In this document: piece by piece, positions 2,291 to 31,236 of the stretch
Layout: every line of letters starts with the position of its first letter
Position numbering within the stretch: the stretch's first letter is position 1
IMG/VR virus record: IMGVR_UViG_3300032116_000001
Span: 314,849 to 378,848 of that record
Length of the DNA stretch: 64,000 bases
Direction: 5' to 3' (one strand)
The notes under the pieces: generated by a model
What the model was told of the DNA's origin: nothing
Database searches by the model: none
Seen by the model: only the letters and a program-made list of their open reading frames with translations
Program-made: the position numbers and the translations under genes

Positions 2291-3615
2291 GTTCTGAAAA
2301 ATCTACTAATTTCTAAAAAATTCTCAAATCATGCAGGAATACTTAGGGTATGTCCTTTAATAAACTAATGTGATTGCAGTAGAAAGACATCATATTAAAG
2401 CAACGAAAGATTTACTCAGGCTGACAAGCCTGAGTAAAGAACTCTATAATAGATGCAATTTCTTAATGAGACAAGCATGGTTTAAGAAAGAAAGACTGCC
2501 AGATATTAGCATTCTTATTAAAGAAACTCAACATTTGAATTGTTTCAAGAATCTACATAATACAAAAACTGCAAAACAAACAATCCGTCAAGTATTGACG
2601 GATTGGAGTAACTATAGAAAGGCACTTACTGCCTACGGCAGAGATAAATCTAAATTCTTAGGATGTCCTAAGCCTCCTCACTATAAAAAGAAACTATCTC
2701 AAGTGATTTTCTATAATGAAACAATTAAAGGAGGACAGAGCGGAAAGCCAAAGGCTTTCCTTACTCCAACAAATAATTGCTTCAGTATTAAATCAGATAA
2801 ACAGTACAAACAAGTAGTAGTTACTCCAAAAACTTTTGGTTTTATGATAGAAGTTCAATATGAACTTCCTAATATCCCAAAGCCGAAAACTAAGAAAAAC
2901 AATTTTTGTTGCATTGACATAGGATTGAATAATCTAGCAACGATAACTTCAGATAAGCATAGTCCAATACTTATCAACGGTCGTATAGTTAAATCATTCA
3001 ATCAACAATACAACAAGAACGTCAGTAAGAAATCATCTCGAAAGAGATATTTTAGACTGGAAAATTACTTCCATCATGTCAGTAAAATCATTGTGGAAAA
3101 TTGTGTTAAACACAATCTAGGAACTATTGTCATTGGCAAAAATGATGGATGGAAAACAGGGATGAAACTTGGAAAGAAAACAAATCAGAATTTCTGTTCT
3201 GTTCCCTTCTGTAATTTATTTCAGAAGATTCAGTACAAGGCTAACGCATTGGGAATTGATGTTATCTTTACTGAAGAATCCTACACAAGTCAAGCATCAT
3301 TTCTGGATAGGGATGAAATCCCTGTCTGGAAGAAAGGAAGGCAGAATGAATATGAGTTCTCTGGAACTCGTATTAAAAGAGGCTTGTATCGCAGTGCCGA
3401 AGGCACTCTGCTTAATGCAGATGCAAATGGCAGTGCAAACATTGGACGAAAAGTATTCCCAAACGACGCCTTCGGCGTTGAATGGGATAGGAGCGTTGCC
3501 GAAACGCCAGTTGTCGTTAATCCATTAAGACAAGTGTGCGCAGCCTAACGGCTGCGAGCAACACACTTAGCTGATTAAGACATAAACTTGTAGATTTTTG
3601 TAGATTTACAGGAAC
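2291..3615 (+). mobile_element. tnpB-only IS200/605-IS607-type element (ends approximate)
   Basis: Imperfect inverted ends GTTCTGAAAAATCTAC (2291) and GTAGATTTACAGGAAC (3615); hairpin CGCAGCC-TAAC-GGCTGCG at the tnpB 3' end; no tnpA. Confidence 0.55.
2370..3548 (+). CDS. tnpB: RNA-guided endonuclease TnpB
   Basis: CIDIGLNNLA (RuvC-I), IVIGKNDGWK...NQNF, EESYTSQAS, RIKRGLY, NADANGSANI. Confidence 0.9.
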   Translation: MIAVERHHIKATKDLLRLTSLSKELYNRCNFLMRQAWFKKERLPDISILIKETQHLNCFKNLHNTKTAKQTIRQVLTDWSNYRKALTAYGRDKSKFLGCPKPPHYKKKLSQVIFYNETIKGGQSGKPKAFLTPTNNCFSIKSDKQYKQVVVTPKTFGFMIEVQYELPNIPKPKTKKNNFCCIDIGLNNLATITSDKHSPILINGRIVKSFNQQYNKNVSKKSSRKRYFRLENYFHHVSKIIVENCVKHNLGTIVIGKNDGWKTGMKLGKKTNQNFCSVPFCNLFQKIQYKANALGIDVIFTEESYTSQASFLDRDEIPVWKKGRQNEYEFSGTRIKRGLYRSAEGTLLNADANGSANIGRKVFPNDAFGVEWDRSVAETPVVVNPLRQVCAA

Positions 3616-17884: not shown

Positions 17885-18451
17885 TTATTTACCCGTCATG
17901 TCCCCGACTGTTTTGCCTGCTTCCCACATTCGGCAAGACCAATATCTTGCCTTTGTCTTTGGGCCAGGATTATCACAATTATGTCGGGCGCGGAAGTTCT
18001 TTCGGCGCTCAGGATTGTCTCTTTTAATATCAGTCGTTGGATCGCCGAAATTAACTTTTTTAACCTTATCACCATCTTTGACATAGACAGAGAATTTTTT
18101 AGGCCCATCTGGGGTGCGAAAAGGCTTGTTTAGTGGTTTGTTGGACTTTGCCTGAGCTTCTCTTTGTGGAGATTTTTCCAATTTGATAATTTTATCAAAA
18201 TAACCAATGTCAATAAGCCGAGGGTCATCAATGTATTTTTCCACCGCATCATTAAACTCGGCTCTTGCTTCATAGTGTAGTGTTTCCACGTTTTCTTCAA
18301 AATCAAGCTCTTCTAACTCTTTTGAAGATGACCTTTGATTAGTTGTGTTGACATTTGCTATCCGACTCAAAACATCAGTAAGGATATCAGCTTCTTCGTG
18401 CAGGCCTAGTTTGTCCAATTCGTGTGCCACTTGAGCAATCTTTTTCAGCAT
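17885..18451 (-). CDS. helical-tag phage protein
   Basis: Start MLKKIAQVAHELDKLGLHEEADIL (ATG 18451); C-terminal VNFGDP...RRKNFRARHNC...ARYWSC module. Confidence 0.75.
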   Translation of the reverse strand: MLKKIAQVAHELDKLGLHEEADILTDVLSRIANVNTTNQRSSSKELEELDFEENVETLHYEARAEFNDAVEKYIDDPRLIDIGYFDKIIKLEKSPQREAQAKSNKPLNKPFRTPDGPKKFSVYVKDGDKVKKVNFGDPTTDIKRDNPERRKNFRARHNCDNPGPKTKARYWSCRMWEAGKTVGDMTGK

Positions 18452-18452
18452 A

Positions 18453-19019
18453 TTAGTCCTCTTTTTTCCACTTACCGCCCTTAGCCTTGTATCGCTTACT
18501 TGCAGCCCCGAGTGCATAAGCTGATGGCCAGACGTCGTATTTGTCCTTGGCCCAATTTTTGCAGCTTTCCCAAAGCTCAGGATTAGTGGGGATATTTTCT
18601 TTTTCTTTAGTCTTGGCAACTCGAATAAAAACTTCATGCATTTGTGATGCTTCAGCTGTCATACCCCGATCCTCAAGCTCTTCAGTGATTTGAGAAATCT
18701 TTGTAAGGACGCTGGCCACAGCACTAGTTGTAATGTTTTCTTCATCTTCTTCGTCGTCGCTCTGCAGGTTGTCTTCAAGTTCAAAATAACGTCTTAAAAT
18801 TAACAATTCTTTTCTTAACTGATCTATTTCTTCGGGATCGTAGATTCCGCGATCAAGCCCCTGTAAACACTGATCGACTTCCATCATTCCTTCCCAGGGA
18901 TAATGTGCCACACCTGTTGACGCAAAAGAGTACAATGCAGAACCTTGACCGCCATGCCAATCACTTGCAATGCGGCGAAGTTCCCCGATGCTATATCCAC
19001 TAATATCAATTTCACCCAT
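18453..19019 (-). CDS. helical-tag phage protein
   Basis: DWHGGQGSALY domain, ITEELEDRGMTAEASQM tag, WPSAYA...YKAKGGKWK module. Confidence 0.75.
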   Translation of the reverse strand: MGEIDISGYSIGELRRIASDWHGGQGSALYSFASTGVAHYPWEGMMEVDQCLQGLDRGIYDPEEIDQLRKELLILRRYFELEDNLQSDDEEDEENITTSAVASVLTKISQITEELEDRGMTAEASQMHEVFIRVAKTKEKENIPTNPELWESCKNWAKDKYDVWPSAYALGAASKRYKAKGGKWKKED

Positions 19020-19224
19020 GATAATTCTTTTTTACACTCTTTGAATCTCTTTCCCTGTTTTGTCGATGCTCATTGTAGGTTCAATTTCATTTAAAAAAAA
19101 CTTTTTTTGAAAAAAGACAAAAAAGCTGCAACATTTTCTTTGGCCAATCGTTATAAGTAGTGTAAGACGAATTGAAAAGAGCCAAAACGATCTGAAAAGC
19201 AAATTGAAAATTTTATAGAGGTTT

Positions 19225-19800
19225 GAGAAAAGCTGCGACGGCACGGAAAGACGTGCGAGAGCAGATGGTAGAAATGAGCTAGGTTTGCATCTCCCCGATA
19301 GAGGAAACTCATTTCATCTGGTAACCAATCCAGATCGTAGCTTTTCTCGGCGGCATGGCGTCGATAGATATCGCACTGCAAAGTGCAGAAAGAGATCAGG
19401 CCACTTCACGGTCTCTCGCCTTTCTTAAGAAAGGTCAACCATGCAAGCCCAGCACCTGTGAGCTTCAGGCCCAAAACCTGGAGATATGGTGGAAGATGGA
19501 GGGAGAAGAGTCAGCGTTATCGAGGCAACCGTGTAGATAACAGTTTGATCGCCGTTGCAAGCGGCAATGCCCACGCAAGCCATCGACATCTAAGGAGCGA
19601 AGGGTAGTTATATTTGTCCGAGGTTTAAGCAGCCAAGGGCTATATAGCACGATGAAAGGCGAGGCGGAGAAGATGGACTTCAATGCCGTATTAGTCTTGA
19701 AATCGCGTTGAGTAACCTAGCAGGGTGAAAGACATGAGGCGTGTCATATTTTGTATTGTAAAGCAATATGAAGTGGCTGGACGCGCACGTCTCGCGTGAA
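19225..19800 (+). ncRNA. probable GOLLD-type large structured RNA
   Basis: No credible ORF; many hairpins with GCAA loops; 3' block TTGAGTAACC..GCAGGGTGAAAGACATGAGGCGTG..TTGTATT..ATATGAAG..GCACGTCTC resembles the GOLLD 3' domain as I recall it; tRNA-adjacent context. Confidence 0.6.
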
Positions 19801-19803
19801 GTT

Positions 19804-19874
19804 GCAAACATAGCTGAATGGTACAGCACTGTTATCTGAACAGTAGATTATTGGTTCAAGTCCAATTGTTTATT
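19804..19874 (+). pseudogene. degenerate tRNA (TCT, Arg-like)
   Basis: TAGCTGAATGGTACAGC D arm, ACTGT-TATCTGA-ACAGT, GGTTCAAGTCC; A at position 33, acceptor mismatch, no CCA. Confidence 0.6.
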
Positions 19875-19915
19875 AAAAATGCAAAAGTCGCGTCCTGTGT
19901 TAATTGAAAGCAGCG

Positions 19916-20459
19916 TATTTCCTGAGTGTGGGACAGTCAGGAGCATCGAAGATGGCAAGTCTAAGATGTATCGTAGGATTCAAGACGTAGTATCTTAGCG
20001 GATATTCACGGCAGTAAAATGTCGGCGGCAAGAAGATCACGTAGAAGATTAACATTAAACTGGAAAAGCCACCAGTATAAAAAGGCCGCTGTGTGAAGGT
20101 ACTGCTGGCAACAGTAGTGGACAATTAGGCAAAGCACATCGCAAGTGTGCTGTACTCCTAAAAAGCCGTCACAAATCAGTTTTTAGTCTACAAATTGAAA
20201 CTCCCACATTAAATTTTAATGACTAACATTTTGTTAGTTGAATCCTAAATGAGTCCCAATCCAACAGGGGTTCTTGGTCAGATTTAAGTTCTGCTGGGAG
20301 ACTCATACGATGTAATCCTCGGAACCGATGCTCTGGGACATTGAATGAAAGTTCAATAGTCATATGATCGCCGAGGCGAGAAGAAAAGAAGTTTTGGCTT
20401 TCTTCTTTAAAAAAGCCAATTAGATTTGCGCTCGAATCAACCAAGGACGCTTGGGAATA
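19916..20459 (+). ncRNA. candidate second large structured RNA (~545 nt)
   Basis: 13 bp closing helix 19916-19929 with 20447-20459; internal GNRA hairpins; no credible ORF. Confidence 0.5.
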
Positions 20460-20461
20460 TC

Positions 20462-20547
20462 GTCAACTACCACACGCACAAGGCGTGTGGCTTGCTACAA
20501 GCTCAGCCTTCGGCTGAGCGAACAATAGGGAGGTTGACTGCTCCCCT
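20462..20547 (-). ncRNA. TnpB omega-RNA scaffold / IS right end
   Basis: GTCAAC...GTTGAC closing pair with hairpins GCTCAGCC-GAA-GGCTGAGC and CCACACGC..GCGTGTGG overlapping the tnpB stop. Confidence 0.75.
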
Positions 20548-21584
20548 AAAGAACCTATATTCTTACTGGCATTAAAGTCTGCATTCTCCGTGTGTCCGCA
20601 GGACATGCAGAGAAACACAGTTTGACTTTTTCTATTGGCTTTTTCACAATATCCGCACTCACTACACGTCGCAGACGTGTAGTGAGCAGGAACAATAGCT
20701 AAAGGAACTCCATAGAGTTCAGCTTTGTAAGTAATGTAGCTTCTGAGTTGGGCGAATGCCCAACTCATTCTTTGACTTCTATTCACTCGCCTGACCGTTA
20801 CTCTTTTGTTGATATGCGTTAGCTCTTCGAGAGCCAACGCATATCCGAGTGCCTTTGCTTTTGTTACTAAAAGTTTTGAAATGACGTGATTTGTGTCTTT
20901 TCTAAATCTGGATTCTTTTTGTCCACATTTCTTGATTCTTCTTTTTGCAGAGCGTGTTCCACGCTTCTGCAATCTTTGTCGATGAGAGTGATATTGTTTT
21001 CTTTTCTTCTCGATGTGTTCTCCCGAGAACACATCTCCTAAAGAACTTACAGCGATTTGTTTCACTCCTAAGTCTATTCCTATAACGTCTTTGGCGTTAT
21101 AGGCTGATTCTGTTGGAATTTCTAAAGTACAAAGAAGATAGAACTTGCCATTTTGATAAACTAAATCAACTTGCCCCTTTCTATATTTGAAGCGTTCTTT
21201 GTCGTATATTTGGATTGGGATATTGATTCTTCCATCATTAGTCCAGATATTAACTAAATCAGTTCCTTTAAAAGTGATTACTCTGTCGTCGTAGACGACA
21301 GCAGAAGTCTTTTTGAAGTAATTTGGATTTTTGCTTCTTTTCTTTTTATATGTAGCGGTAACCACATCAATAGCCCTTATTATTAATTGAGAAGAGAAGC
21401 TTGGATGCGTTTCACGCATCCCATGATATGCATTTCTTTGCAATTGAACTTTATTATAAGTTTCTGTTGAATGAGCTATTGTTGAAAGCTCATTACAAAC
21501 ATCATTGAAAGTATTCATAGTGCGCAGAAGCGCACTATGATGAATCTCATTTGTATTGAGTTTCACTTTCAGAGTGATATTCAC
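20463..21584 (-). CDS. tnpB: RNA-guided endonuclease TnpB (IS200/IS605, tnpB-only)
   Basis: GIDLG, ALEEL and NADFNA catalytic triad; CSECG/CMSCG Zn finger. Confidence 0.95.
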   Translation of the reverse strand: MNITLKVKLNTNEIHHSALLRTMNTFNDVCNELSTIAHSTETYNKVQLQRNAYHGMRETHPSFSSQLIIRAIDVVTATYKKKRSKNPNYFKKTSAVVYDDRVITFKGTDLVNIWTNDGRINIPIQIYDKERFKYRKGQVDLVYQNGKFYLLCTLEIPTESAYNAKDVIGIDLGVKQIAVSSLGDVFSGEHIEKKRKQYHSHRQRLQKRGTRSAKRRIKKCGQKESRFRKDTNHVISKLLVTKAKALGYALALEELTHINKRVTVRRVNRSQRMSWAFAQLRSYITYKAELYGVPLAIVPAHYTSATCSECGYCEKANRKSQTVFLCMSCGHTENADFNASKNIGSLGEQSTSLLFAQPKAELVASHTPCACGS

Positions 21585-21738
21585 ATTATGTGTTTATGTG
21601 TAATGCGTTCTAACACCTTCGTGATTTTCAATTATTTTTACATATTATCGTAAATTCGATTCCTCCTATAAAATTGTCGTCTTGGCGCAGACGTTAAACG
21701 CGCCTTTTCTGTTTTAAAAATTGTACAAGGAAAGTGTA

Positions 21739-22524
21739 ATGAGATTAAAAACGAAACAAGAAATTTCAAAGATGTTTATCACTGGGGCCATTTTAGCCGA
21801 TGCCCTTAAAATCATGAAAGAGTCAGTGGTGCCAGGTATCACAACCTTGGAAATTGATTCTATAGGAGAATCGTATGTTAAGAGTTGTGGTGCAGTGGCC
21901 GCATTAAAGGGATTTAAGCCCCGATTTTCCGATCATGTTTACCAGCATGCAACTTGTATTTCAGTTAATAATCAAATTATTCACGCCCCGCCCTCCGACT
22001 ATACGATAAAAAAGGGGGATATTGTAACCTTGGACATGGCTATATCTAAAGCTTATTGGTATGCCGATGCGGCTATCACTATCGTAGTAGAAGACAATGA
22101 CAGTGATGAATACAAAGAGTCAAAAATACTATCTGAATATACACACTTGGCACTTTTGTCAACGATTGAAAAAATTATGTCAGGAGACATAAAAAAAACA
22201 AGCGACATTGGAAAGCATATTCAGAAAATGGCCGATAAAAAAAACTTCGGCGTGGTATCTGCGGCTTGCGGTCACTCGATAGGTCAAGAATTACATGAGC
22301 TAGGAATACAGATTCTTAATTCTTATGAAGAAGGAGATTCGGGGGTAAATATTGTGCCAGGAATGACATTCTGTATAGAACCTATTTTTACAATGGGATC
22401 GGGTGATATTACGAAAGACAAGCTTGATCCTTGGACGATATATACTTCTGATGGCTCTCATTCGGCTCACTGGGAACACACCGTGGCAATTACAGAAAAT
22501 GGCCCCTTAATATTGACATTATGA
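21739..22524 (+). CDS. map: methionine aminopeptidase, type I
   Basis: SVNNQIIH, LDM, YAD, GHSIG, LHE, IEP, EHT metal ligands all present. Confidence 0.93.
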   Translation: MRLKTKQEISKMFITGAILADALKIMKESVVPGITTLEIDSIGESYVKSCGAVAALKGFKPRFSDHVYQHATCISVNNQIIHAPPSDYTIKKGDIVTLDMAISKAYWYADAAITIVVEDNDSDEYKESKILSEYTHLALLSTIEKIMSGDIKKTSDIGKHIQKMADKKNFGVVSAACGHSIGQELHELGIQILNSYEEGDSGVNIVPGMTFCIEPIFTMGSGDITKDKLDPWTIYTSDGSHSAHWEHTVAITENGPLILTL

Positions 22525-29673: not shown

Positions 29674-31236
29674 ATGTGGTACAAGCAGGCTCAAAACACC
29701 GTTGAAGAAAATAAAAAGTCCAAGTCTTTTTATTCTCATATGCTTCGCGTCGTTGAAGAAAAAATGGGCTCAAAAATGCCTGCTCAAGACCTTAAAAGAC
29801 TGCTTCAAAAATCTGGCGTCAGTGCCGAAGAAATGAGTTGGGTACACCTTGACGAGTATTTGGAAAACAACCCTATTGTTTTTAAATCAGATTTGATAAA
29901 TAGAATACAGTCAAAGCTGCACAATATTGTAGTTCACGAAATGGATTATGAACAAGAACATGAAGACAATCGTGATACCACATGGGGAACGCAATTTGAT
30001 GATGAAGATTACTTCAAGGGCTATGAAGACTATACTCTGCCCTACGGGGATGATTATAAGGAGTTTTTAATTACAATCGGCGCGAAACCAGAAGATGAGT
30101 TTATTGATTATTTGATGAAGATAAATACTGGTTACGAGCGAATGGGTCGCGAAGCACTAAAGAAAAGCATTGAAGAGCATCCTGGTTCGTGGCGCAATCA
30201 TTGGGGACATTGGAAGCGTTCTTTGGGGGAGGACTTCCCCGATTATGAATCTAGGCACTTCGAGGGTCATAAAAACCCCATAGCTCACATGAGAACGACT
30301 TCAAGAACGTCTAAGGACGGAAAGAAGTCTTTACATATTGAGGAAATACAAAGCGACTGGCACCAGGATGGGCGCAAACATGGATATGATCGGCCAGGAC
30401 GTGCCAAAGATATAATCACAGTGTCGAAGCTGTGGGAGAAGGTTGCTGTTTTTAAATCGGCCACGGAAGAAGAAAAGAAAGAATATGAAGCTGCAAAAAC
30501 AAGGTTAGAAAGAGATCAGTGGCGACCCGACACTGTCCCCCCTGGCCCATATGCGAAAAACTGGCACGAATTGGCGATGAAGCATGCTATTGATATGGCA
30601 GTACGCGGCGGTTATGATCGCGTAACATGGAACACGGGTGATATTAGCCGAAACATATTTGGGCTATCTAATGTTTTAGATAAATTAGAATTAACAAAAG
30701 ATCAAAACGGAAGAATTTATATTCGTGGCTGGATGTCAGATAAAATAAAAGTTAACCAACAAGCTGTCGAGTCAAAAGAGCTTGCAAATTATATAGGCAA
30801 AGACCTGGCAGAGAAATTTTTATCATCGGGGCAAGAATCAATGGTTATTCAGGGTAAAGACTTGGAATATGGCGGCTACGGATTGCAAGCATTTTATGAT
30901 CACATTCTGCCAAGCTTTACTAAAAAATACATTAAAAAATGGAACGGGGACGTTGGCGAGCATGAGGTGAATCAGGGTCAATACATGCACTACATTCAGG
31001 AAAGGCCAGCGCCTGATGGTTCGTGGATTGTCCGTCAATTTAGTCCATCAGGATTAAATGAATCAACTGAATCTTTTCCGTCTTTAGAAGAGGCGAAAAA
31101 GTTTAAGGAAGAGAACAGAGTCAAATCTTGGGCGAAAGTTCACGGATTTGATATTACCCCCGAAATGCGAGAAGATATACAGAATAATGGACAGAGACTT
31201 GCCACATCCATTGTGGCCAGAAGAGTGAAAGGATAA
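29674..31236 (+). CDS. MWY-tagged protein resembling a large polyvalent/ejection-protein domain
   Basis: MWYKQAQ; HF..KNPIAHMR...LHIEEIQSDWHQ.GR..GY; AFYD.ILP. Confidence 0.7.
   Translation: MWYKQAQNTVEENKKSKSFYSHMLRVVEEKMGSKMPAQDLKRLLQKSGVSAEEMSWVHLDEYLENNPIVFKSDLINRIQSKLHNIVVHEMDYEQEHEDNRDTTWGTQFDDEDYFKGYEDYTLPYGDDYKEFLITIGAKPEDEFIDYLMKINTGYERMGREALKKSIEEHPGSWRNHWGHWKRSLGEDFPDYESRHFEGHKNPIAHMRTTSRTSKDGKKSLHIEEIQSDWHQDGRKHGYDRPGRAKDIITVSKLWEKVAVFKSATEEEKKEYEAAKTRLERDQWRPDTVPPGPYAKNWHELAMKHAIDMAVRGGYDRVTWNTGDISRNIFGLSNVLDKLELTKDQNGRIYIRGWMSDKIKVNQQAVESKELANYIGKDLAEKFLSSGQESMVIQGKDLEYGGYGLQAFYDHILPSFTKKYIKKWNGDVGEHEVNQGQYMHYIQERPAPDGSWIVRQFSPSGLNESTESFPSLEEAKKFKEENRVKSWAKVHGFDITPEMREDIQNNGQRLATSIVARRVKG

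What the first reader, a model, noticed from the sequence alone, without database searches (positions are those of the whole stretch)
19225..19800. Probable GOLLD-type giant RNA with its own promoter-like upstream region
Seen: 14 bp helix GAGAAAAGCTGCGA/TCGTAGCTTTTCTC (19225-19238 with 19335-19348), GCACT-GCAA-AGTGC, GCCGTT-GCAA-GCGGC, CCTTTCT/AGAAAGG, GAGGCGTG/CACGTCTC, and an AACATTT-N12-CGTTATAAG promoter-like site at 19130. Established: GOLLD RNAs occur in phages near tRNAs and form RNA nanocages. The 3' domain match is from memory, not from a search.
Basis: partly seen in the sequence, partly recalled or inferred. Interest (0 to 1): 0.62.

Follow-up and report, generated by a model that had tools for sequence, protein, structure and literature searches.

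The report
GOLLD giant RNA in jumbo phage
This is a real, expressed ~980-base GOLLD RNA, a known class of phage RNAs that build RNA-only cages. It sits in a 379-kb freshwater phage, is a divergent copy that standard annotation misses, and has a tRNA-like piece built into it.

Summary
Window 19225-20206 (+) encodes one GOLLD RNA.

- **3' domain:** the Rfam GOLLD model aligns end to end at 19734-20195 (127.9 bits, E 1.4e-34). That is below Rfam's curated cut-off of 150, so default annotation misses it.
- **5' domain:** A covariance model built here from 34 other GOLLDs matches 19349-19447 (E 1.6e-6). The last third matches weakly at the expected place (19606-19725). The middle (19448-19605) matches nothing. 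19223-19350 is an extra 5' stem-junction.
- **Linker:** a degenerate tRNA-Arg(UCU)-like element (19804-19874) lies in the linker, as in some known GOLLDs.
- **Expression:** four freshwater metatranscriptomes from four studies each hold one 100%-identical contig. The contigs start at 19229-19239 and end at 20204-20207, and the flanking genes have no coverage. The RNA is therefore discrete and keeps the tRNA-like insert.
- **Promoter:** A -10-like TATAGA at 19214-19219 fits the RNA's start better.

By homology it probably assembles into a multimeric nanocage with the linker inside. That is inferred, and its function is unknown. It is a new, divergent member of a known kind.

The parts
19225..20206 (+). 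The whole GOLLD RNA as seen in RNA libraries (~980 nt)
   Evidence: One 100%-identical contig in each of four freshwater metatranscriptome runs from four studies: 19235-20204, 19229-20207, 19231-20206, 19239-20205. Coverage is zero over 18000-19228 in all four runs; over 20435-22000 it is zero except for trace depth (0.53) in the 20412-20545 bin of X12. In X18 the contig runs into Illumina adapter letters at 20206. The 5' limit of 19225 is inferred from the base of the first helix; the strand comes from the covariance-model matches.
19214..19219 (+). -10-like hexamer TATAGA, 5-6 nt upstream of the RNA's inferred first base; no -35 partner
   Evidence: Read from the sequence. The sigma-70 scan found no full promoter on the + strand here. 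This is inference only; the phage may use another promoter type.
19223..19350 (+). Extra 5' stem closed by a 14-16 pair helix, with a branched junction (three inner hairpins in the predicted fold); lies upstream of the conserved 5'-domain start
   Evidence: Predicted fold -53.8 kcal/mol, z -4.1. Helix confirmed. Included in the RNA contigs from 19229 on. No equivalent of this size appears in the 34 canonical GOLLDs (alignments A1/A3).
19349..19447 (+). GOLLD 5' domain, first sub-domain. Starts with GGCGG-N4-GCGTC-N3-AGATA. The closing helix pairs 19353-19358 with 19439-19444 and encloses the GCACT-GCAA-AGTGC hairpin and the CCTTTCT/AGAAAGG hairpin
   Evidence: Model R1, built from 34 other GOLLDs, scores 43.9 bits, E 1.6e-6, over the full model with no broken pair. 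Across six non-seed sequences including this one, 96.5% of cells pair and 13 of 21 pairs show compensatory changes, against 25-49% paired in slid controls.
19448..19605 (+). Middle of the 5' domain, divergent; holds the GCCGTT-GCAA-GCGGC hairpin at 19551
   Evidence: Model R2 of the canonical middle sub-domain finds nothing here: best 2.2 bits, E 1.9 within the interval. No relative is close enough to test covariation.
19606..19725 (+). Last sub-domain of the 5' domain, weakly recognisable
   Evidence: Model R3 gives its best match of the 98-kb search exactly here: 13.1 bits, E 0.41. The E-value is 0.0013 when only the a-priori interval 19440-19745 is searched.
19734..19795 (+). First hairpin of the conserved 3' domain (P14 in the published numbering), based on GAGGCGTG/CACGTCTC
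   Evidence: Rfam GOLLD model positions 1-62, posterior probability near 1.
19804..19874 (+). tRNA-Arg(UCU)-like element inside the variable linker
   Evidence: ARAGORN and Rfam tRNA, 45.1 bits, the lowest tRNA score in the window. It has A at position 33, a C2:A71 mismatch, G1:U72, and no encoded CCA. It is retained in the RNA contigs. It resembles the linker tRNAs of GOLLDs L099 and L098 more than any tRNA of its own genome.
19881..20195 (+). 3' domain core (P15-P27): GCAAAAGTC ... GAAAG motif, long-range helix 19897-19905 with 20047-20055 (the Rfam pseudoknot), and last hairpin 20180-20194
   Evidence: Rfam GOLLD model to position 416. In an 8-sequence subfamily alignment that includes the window, 64 pairs are predicted and 50 show compensatory changes, including the long-range helix at columns 22-29/174-181. 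Coordinates.

Best explanation
Window 19225-20206 (+) is the gene of a GOLLD RNA (Rfam RF02032) carried by a 379-kb freshwater phage. It yields one stable ~980-nt RNA built from five parts: a lineage-specific 5' stem-junction; a GOLLD 5' domain with conserved ends and a replaced middle; the P14 hairpin; a linker holding a degenerate tRNA-Arg(UCU)-like element that stays in the RNA; and the conserved, pseudoknotted 3' domain. By homology with the solved GOLLD structures (10-, 12- and 14-mers), it most likely self-assembles without protein into a two-layer, dihedrally symmetric nanocage. The 3' domains would form the rings, the 5' domains the caps, and the linker with its tRNA-like element would point into the cavity. 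What is shown: family membership, the structure-preserving substitutions, the RNA's extent, and its presence in natural RNA samples. What is inferred: multimer formation, the position of the linker, and any role (caging or storing the tRNA-like element or other cargo during infection).
For: - **3' domain:** the Rfam GOLLD model aligns over all 416 positions at 19734-20195, 127.9 bits, E 1.4e-34 (the same hit in the whole genome has E 3e-36 and is the only copy).
- **Relatives:** those found here score 126-241 bits with the same model.
- **3' domain covariation:** in a subfamily alignment that includes the window, 50 of 64 pairs have compensatory changes, including the pseudoknot helix.
- **5' sub-domain A:** it matches model R1, built from 34 other GOLLDs, at E 1.6e-6 with all pairs kept, and covariation holds in non-seed sequences.
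- **5' sub-domain C:** it gives the top hit at the expected place.
- **Expression:** four metatranscriptomes each give one exact contig, starting at 19229-19239 and ending at 20204-20207, with silent flanks and an adapter junction at 20206. Six RNA runs and 17 studies in all hold the stretch.
- **Context:** a phage genome with 33 tRNAs and a tmRNA.
- **Literature:** GOLLD has a conserved 3' and a variable 5' domain, lies near tRNA clusters, sometimes has a tRNA in the linker, and forms 10- to 14-mer cages (PMC12286853, PMC12990946).
Against: - The Rfam score is below the curated gathering cut-off (127.9 against 150), and the default scan reports nothing.
- About 11 model pairs are flagged non-canonical, mostly at model positions ~215-300.
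- A plain sequence HMM of canonical 3' domains does not find the window.
- The middle 5' sub-domain has no detectable homology.
- No close relative was found, so the 5' stem-junction and the middle have no covariation support.
- Assembled contigs cannot show strand, exact ends or minor processed forms.
- Multimer formation has not been tested for this sequence, and loops that mediate contacts in the solved structures may differ here.
Confidence: 0.9

Rival explanations
1. A decaying GOLLD relic: a former GOLLD gene that is still transcribed but no longer folds or assembles as the family does.
For: The Rfam score is sub-threshold. The middle 5' sub-domain is unrecognisable. About 11 non-canonical pairs sit in the central 3' region. 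The embedded tRNA is degenerate. A TnpB element is inserted about 260 nt downstream.
Against: The differences from relatives are mostly compensatory rather than disruptive. Fold z-scores are -4.1 and -4.4. The RNA accumulates as a discrete full-length species in four independent natural RNA samples while neighbouring genes are not seen. The exact sequence is held in runs from 17 studies. A variable 5' domain is normal for the family (PMC12286853).
Confidence: 0.05
2. A tRNA-Arg precursor. The long structured flanks would be only leader and trailer of a tRNA transcription unit, and the functional product would be the excised tRNA.
For: A tRNA-like gene lies in the middle. Phage tRNA islands are common, and the window has ten tRNAs. 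Contigs cannot exclude a processed fraction.
Against: The flanks match GOLLD models on both sides. The RNA contigs run through the tRNA uncut in all four runs. The element has A33, a C2:A71 mismatch and no CCA, while a canonical tRNA-Arg(UCU) with CCA exists elsewhere in the genome. In a mycobacterial GOLLD the embedded pseudo-tRNA was not detectably expressed on its own (PMC6582537).
Confidence: 0.03
3. A new structured RNA class unrelated to GOLLD, or an RNA belonging to the neighbouring TnpB element.
For: No match at Rfam gathering thresholds. TnpB lies at 20463-21584 on the minus strand.
Against: E 1.4e-34 over the full GOLLD model and an independent 5'-domain model hit. The guide RNA of TnpB would lie on the minus strand just downstream of its stop; a separate low-depth RNA contig at 20247-20434 fits that and is distinct from the GOLLD contig.
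Confidence: 0.02

Closest known systems
GOLLD RNA env-38 (marine metagenome; 833 nt; cryo-EM 14-mer, PDB 9MEE; PMC12286853)
   Same: Two-domain plan (variable 5' domain, conserved 3' domain P14-P27), a variable linker after P14, the GCAAAAGUC...GAAAG core with a long-range pseudoknot helix, and a phage setting next to tRNAs.
   Different: This RNA is about 150 nt longer. It has an extra 124-nt 5' stem-junction, a middle 5' sub-domain with no detectable similarity, a tRNA-like element in the linker, and an extended arm with a GCAA loop near 20126-20160. Its stoichiometry is unknown.
Streptococcus agalactiae GOLLD (700 nt; 12-mer; its 3' domain alone forms 10-mers; PMC12990946)
   Same: It shows that GOLLDs lacking or changing 5' elements (P7, P9, P10, P11a-c, P21b) still assemble, with a different subunit number.
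   Different: It is bacterial and prophage-borne and shorter. The window's RNA changes a different set of elements. Which published helices it lacks was not mapped here.
GOLLDs with a tRNA in the linker (Mycolicibacterium tRNA-array GOLLD with tRNA-Phe or a pseudo-tRNA; PMC12990946, PMC6582537); here also L002, L098, L099, L160-L163, L147, L155, L150, L151, L157
   Same: The tRNA or tRNA-like element sits in the same linker. The anticodon matches L099 (UCU). The embedded elements of the window, L098 and L099 resemble each other.
   Different: tRNA identity varies: Gln in L002 and an odd AUA anticodon in L098. The window's copy is degenerate (A33, acceptor mismatch). Most relatives score above the Rfam cut-off; the window (127.9 bits) and L147 (126.5 bits) do not.
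ROOL RNA (Rfam RF03087)
   Same: A phage-associated large RNA near tRNAs that forms RNA-only cages (PMC12286853).
   Different: Its sequence and fold are unrelated. There is no ROOL match in this genome.

Membership tests
GOLLD RNA (Rfam RF02032) | Score at or above Rfam's curated gathering cut-off (150 bits) | tested here: not met
   127.9 bits; absent from the gathering-threshold scan. The cut-off is a curation choice. One clear relative, L147, also falls below it at 126.5 bits.
GOLLD RNA (Rfam RF02032) | Statistically significant, full-length match to the conserved 3' domain model (sequence plus structure) | tested here: met
   Model positions 1-416 of 416 at 19734-20195, E 1.4e-34; E 3e-36 on the whole genome.
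GOLLD RNA (Rfam RF02032) | 3' domain helices, including the long-range pseudoknot helix, kept by compensatory changes | tested here: met
   Eight-sequence subfamily alignment with the window: 64 pairs, 50 with both-side changes; the helix 19897-19905/20047-20055 corresponds to columns 22-29/174-181. About 11 pairs against the Rfam consensus are non-canonical.
GOLLD RNA (Rfam RF02032) | A 5' domain of the GOLLD type upstream of P14 (the literature describes it as less conserved) | tested here: inconclusive
   First sub-domain met (R1, E 1.6e-6; covariation). Last sub-domain weak but at the right place (R3, E 0.41 globally and 0.0013 in the interval). Middle sub-domain not met (R2).
GOLLD RNA (Rfam RF02032) | Giant size (many members over 800 nt), produced as one RNA | tested here: met
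   RNA contigs of 967-998 nt covering 19229-20207.
GOLLD RNA (Rfam RF02032) | Encoded in a phage or prophage, close to tRNA genes; variable linker after P14 that may hold a tRNA | tested here: met
   378,848-bp virus record, CheckV 100% complete; 33 tRNAs and a tmRNA in the genome, ten tRNAs in the window; tRNA-like element at 19804-19874 between P14 and the core.
GOLLD RNA (Rfam RF02032) | Protein-free assembly into a dihedral 10- to 14-mer nanocage | not testable with these tools
   Known only from cryo-EM of other members (PMC12286853, PMC12990946). The inter-subunit loops were not mapped onto this sequence.

The most novel reading that the evidence does not exclude
The tRNA-like insert may not be a tRNA gene at all. 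It could be a permanently caged, non-decoding module inherited together with the RNA in this lineage. The assembled cage would then be an unusually stable particle that accumulates in lake communities far above the phage's own mRNAs. It might act as a decoy or sponge for host factors that recognise tRNA shape, such as tRNA-cleaving defence nucleases, processing enzymes or translation factors.
Probability: 0.12. Interest if true: 0.75.

Novelty: new member of a known kind. Interest (0 to 1): 0.4.

Why it matters
GOLLD is one of very few natural RNAs known to build protein-free cages, and its function is still unknown. This copy adds four useful things.

1. It is a divergent sequence that default Rfam annotation misses. 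GOLLDs in large environmental phages are therefore probably under-counted.
2. It is a natural variant with an extra 5' stem-junction and a replaced 5' sub-domain. That makes it a test case for how such elements set the number of subunits.
3. It supplies evidence from natural samples. The full-length RNA, with the tRNA-like insert still in it, is a discrete species in freshwater metatranscriptomes while the neighbouring genes are not detected. This bears on the published 'inhibited storage' idea for linker tRNAs.
4. The sequence recurs in runs from 17 studies, so material for experiments could be traced.

Tried and rejected
- **Similarity search:** a blastn search (distant mode) of 19020-20462 against 50,697 phage records found no match.
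- **Synteny:** a search with the adjacent 188-aa protein found two loci, both with N-terminal similarity only and no GOLLD beside them.
- **Sequence HMM:** a plain HMM of canonical 3' domains found 89 other GOLLDs but not the window. Only structure-aware models see it.
- **Middle sub-domain:** model R2 found nothing in the window.
- **Metagenome scan:** a subfamily-specific pattern gave only two loci (L162, L163), both closer to L161 than to the window. No near relative exists in the collections, so the 5' stem-junction and the middle have no covariation test.
- **Genome-collection scans:** one gave 0 hits. The other gave 78 chance hits at tRNA or tmRNA ends; none matched the GOLLD sequence HMM or the window's RNA in nhmmer searches. 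No host inference was possible.
- **Mixed alignment:** MAFFT plus RNAalifold on a mixed set of 17 3' domains gave a poor consensus. It was replaced by the 8-sequence subfamily alignment.
- **Promoter:** the sigma-70 scan found no promoter upstream on the + strand, and 9-mers of the leader are not a repeated phage motif.
- **Terminator:** no G+C-rich terminator follows the 3' end; only two AT-rich hairpins do, at 20207-20238.
- **Other checks:** ROOL is absent from the genome. The nearest cultured phages, by one conserved protein, are only 25-38% identical.
- **Rejected readings:** small ORFs of 47-76 aa overlap the region on both strands. They were not pursued, because the covariance-model matches and the RNA data explain the region.

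Full report
**Setting.** The window is bases 314849-378848 of a 378,848-bp IMG/VR virus record that CheckV rates as complete. It is a jumbo phage with about 40% G+C. The genome carries 33 tRNA genes and a tmRNA, and ten of the tRNAs lie in the window. The finding sits in a 1.44-kb stretch free of long ORFs, between two minus-strand genes. One is a 188-aa ORF ending at 19019. The other is a TnpB-type gene at 20463-21584.

**The observation.** All five helices are at the stated coordinates. The first can be extended to 16 pairs, 19223-19238 with 19335-19350. Helices of that length are not rare by themselves: there are 57 register hits in the window against 9-25 in shuffles. The region as a whole, however, is more stable than shuffled sequence, with z -4.1 for 19215-19360 and z -4.4 for 19225-20200.

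**Identity, 3' domain.** The default Rfam scan at gathering thresholds reports only tRNAs. With E-value reporting, the GOLLD model RF02032 aligns over all 416 positions at 19734-20195 on the + strand, at 127.9 bits and E 1.4e-34. The curated cut-off is 150 bits. It is the only copy in the genome.

The alignment shows these parts:
- a variable linker;
- the GCAAAAGUC...GAAAG core;
- the long-range helix that Rfam marks as a pseudoknot, 19897-19905 with 20047-20055;
- the terminal hairpin.

About 11 pairs are non-canonical, mostly at model positions ~215-300.

Relatives collected from IMG/VR and metagenomes score 126-241 bits with the same model. The window is therefore at the low end of a continuous range. 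In an 8-sequence alignment of the nearest subfamily that includes the window, RNAalifold predicts 64 pairs. Fifty of them have compensatory changes, including the long-range helix.

Rfam does not model the 5' half, so I built models here.
- A motif shared by the window and many GOLLDs (GGCGG-N4-GCGTC-N3-AGATA) retrieved 108 viral loci.
- Thirty-four non-redundant 5' domains align in 391 columns. The consensus has 85 pairs, 42 with compensatory changes.
- A single model was too long for the tool, so the domain was split into three models.

The three models gave different results:
- **R1, first sub-domain:** matches window 19349-19447 at 43.9 bits, E 1.6e-6, over the full model with no broken pair. 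Its closing helix differs from the consensus by compensatory changes on both strands.
- **R1, non-seed check:** six non-seed sequences, the window among them, pair in 96.5% of cells, and 13 of 21 pairs covary. Slid controls give 25-49%.
- **R3, last sub-domain:** its best hit of a 98-kb search is at 19606-19725, directly before the 3' domain. The score is only 13.1 bits, E 0.41. The E-value is 0.0013 when only the expected interval is searched.
- **R2, middle sub-domain:** finds nothing.

The 5' domain thus has conserved ends and a replaced middle, 19448-19605. It closes a 124-nt branched stem that canonical GOLLDs lack at this size.

**Expression and ends.** Runs from 17 studies hold the stretch at near identity. 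They are labelled freshwater or 'fungus' metagenomes, and six are RNA libraries.

Four freshwater metatranscriptomes from four studies were laid on 18000-22000. Each gives one contig with no differing letter: 19235-20204, 19229-20207, 19231-20206 and 19239-20205. No run covers 18000-19228, and 20435-22000 is uncovered apart from trace depth in one bin of X12. The silent flanks argue against DNA carry-over.

In one run the contig continues into Illumina adapter letters at 20206, as expected at a true molecule end. The contigs pass through the tRNA-like element, so the full-length form keeps it.

Three caveats apply. These are assembled contigs, so strand, exact ends and minor processed forms are not shown. 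The strand is taken from the model matches.

**Start and stop signals.** A -10-like TATAGA at 19214-19219 lies 5-6 nt before 19225 but has no -35 partner. No sigma-70-type site passed the scan. The start signal is therefore unresolved; it may be a phage-specific promoter or a processed end. No classical terminator follows 20206; two AT-rich hairpins lie at 20207-20238.

**The linker tRNA.** ARAGORN calls a 71-nt tRNA-Arg(UCU) at 19804-19874. Several features make it look degenerate:
- it has the lowest tRNA score in the window, 45.1 bits;
- it has A rather than U at position 33;
- it has a C2:A71 mismatch next to G1:U72;
- it encodes no CCA.

The genome has a canonical tRNA-Arg(UCU) with CCA at 31084-31159. 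The embedded element resembles the linker tRNAs of GOLLDs L099 (also UCU) and L098 more than any tRNA of its own genome. It seems to have been inherited with the RNA, not newly captured.

Linker tRNAs occur in many GOLLDs found here, several on contigs of 135-386 kb. They are also documented in the literature. A Mycolicibacterium GOLLD carries a tRNA-Phe, with an 'inhibited storage' proposal (PMC12990946). In another mycobacterial GOLLD the embedded pseudo-tRNA was not expressed separately (PMC6582537).

**How it most likely works.** Solved GOLLDs assemble without protein into dihedral cages of 10, 12 or 14 chains. The 3' domains form rings, the 5' domains form caps, and the unresolved linker faces the interior. 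The subunit number changes with the 5' and P21 elements present (PMC12286853, PMC12990946).

The window's RNA has the 3' domain, P14, the linker and the two ends of the 5' domain, so the same kind of assembly is the best-supported mechanism. Its altered middle and extra 5' stem may change the subunit number. All of this is inference from homology. The biological role of GOLLD remains unknown, beyond its link to phage lytic growth.

**Comparison and novelty.** This is a GOLLD, not a new class. The points of interest are its sub-threshold divergence, its modified 5' domain, its degenerate caged tRNA-like insert, and the natural-sample evidence for a discrete full-length RNA. I rate it a new member of a known kind with moderate interest.

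Noticed in passing
window 20463-21584 (-), with 20247-20434: A TnpB-type gene (Pfam OrfB_IS605 plus the Cas12f1-like TNB domain; 373 aa) lies about 260 nt downstream of the GOLLD 3' end. It is single-copy at the DNA level in this genome. In one metatranscriptome a separate low-depth contig covers 20247-20434, just downstream of its stop. That is where a TnpB guide (omega/re) RNA would be encoded.
   Followed up: partly
window 20207-20238: Two adjacent AT-rich hairpins (CATTAAA/TTTAATG and ACTAAC/GTTAGT) sit between the GOLLD 3' end and the TnpB-side RNA contig. They could be a weak terminator or the end of the TnpB element.
   Followed up: no
window 2370-3548 (+): A second, unrelated TnpB-like or transposase ORF (PHROG 506) sits directly after the tRNA island at 1-2084.
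   Followed up: no
genome G000:C1:294065-294858 (outside the window): The phage encodes a tmRNA (tag AENNFAFAA) and, next to it, two tRNAs with the anticodon CUA, which are amber-suppressor-like (ARAGORN labels them 'Pyl'). ORF coverage under the standard code is already 0.8-0.98 in most 20-kb bins, and reading TAG as sense adds little. There is thus no sign of genome-wide TAG recoding.
   Followed up: partly
L161 9259-9705, L162 634-1056, L147 1457-1832: Three phage contigs of the nearest GOLLD subfamily carry alphaproteobacterial-type (permuted) tmRNA genes within about 2 kb of their GOLLD. This hints that those relatives infect Alphaproteobacteria. The window's phage has a one-piece tmRNA instead.
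   Followed up: no
L099 3202-3405 (-): There is a sub-threshold match to bacterial RNase P RNA class A (46.4 bits, against a cut-off of 100). It lies inside a 35-tRNA array next to another GOLLD with a linker tRNA-Arg(UCU).
   Followed up: no
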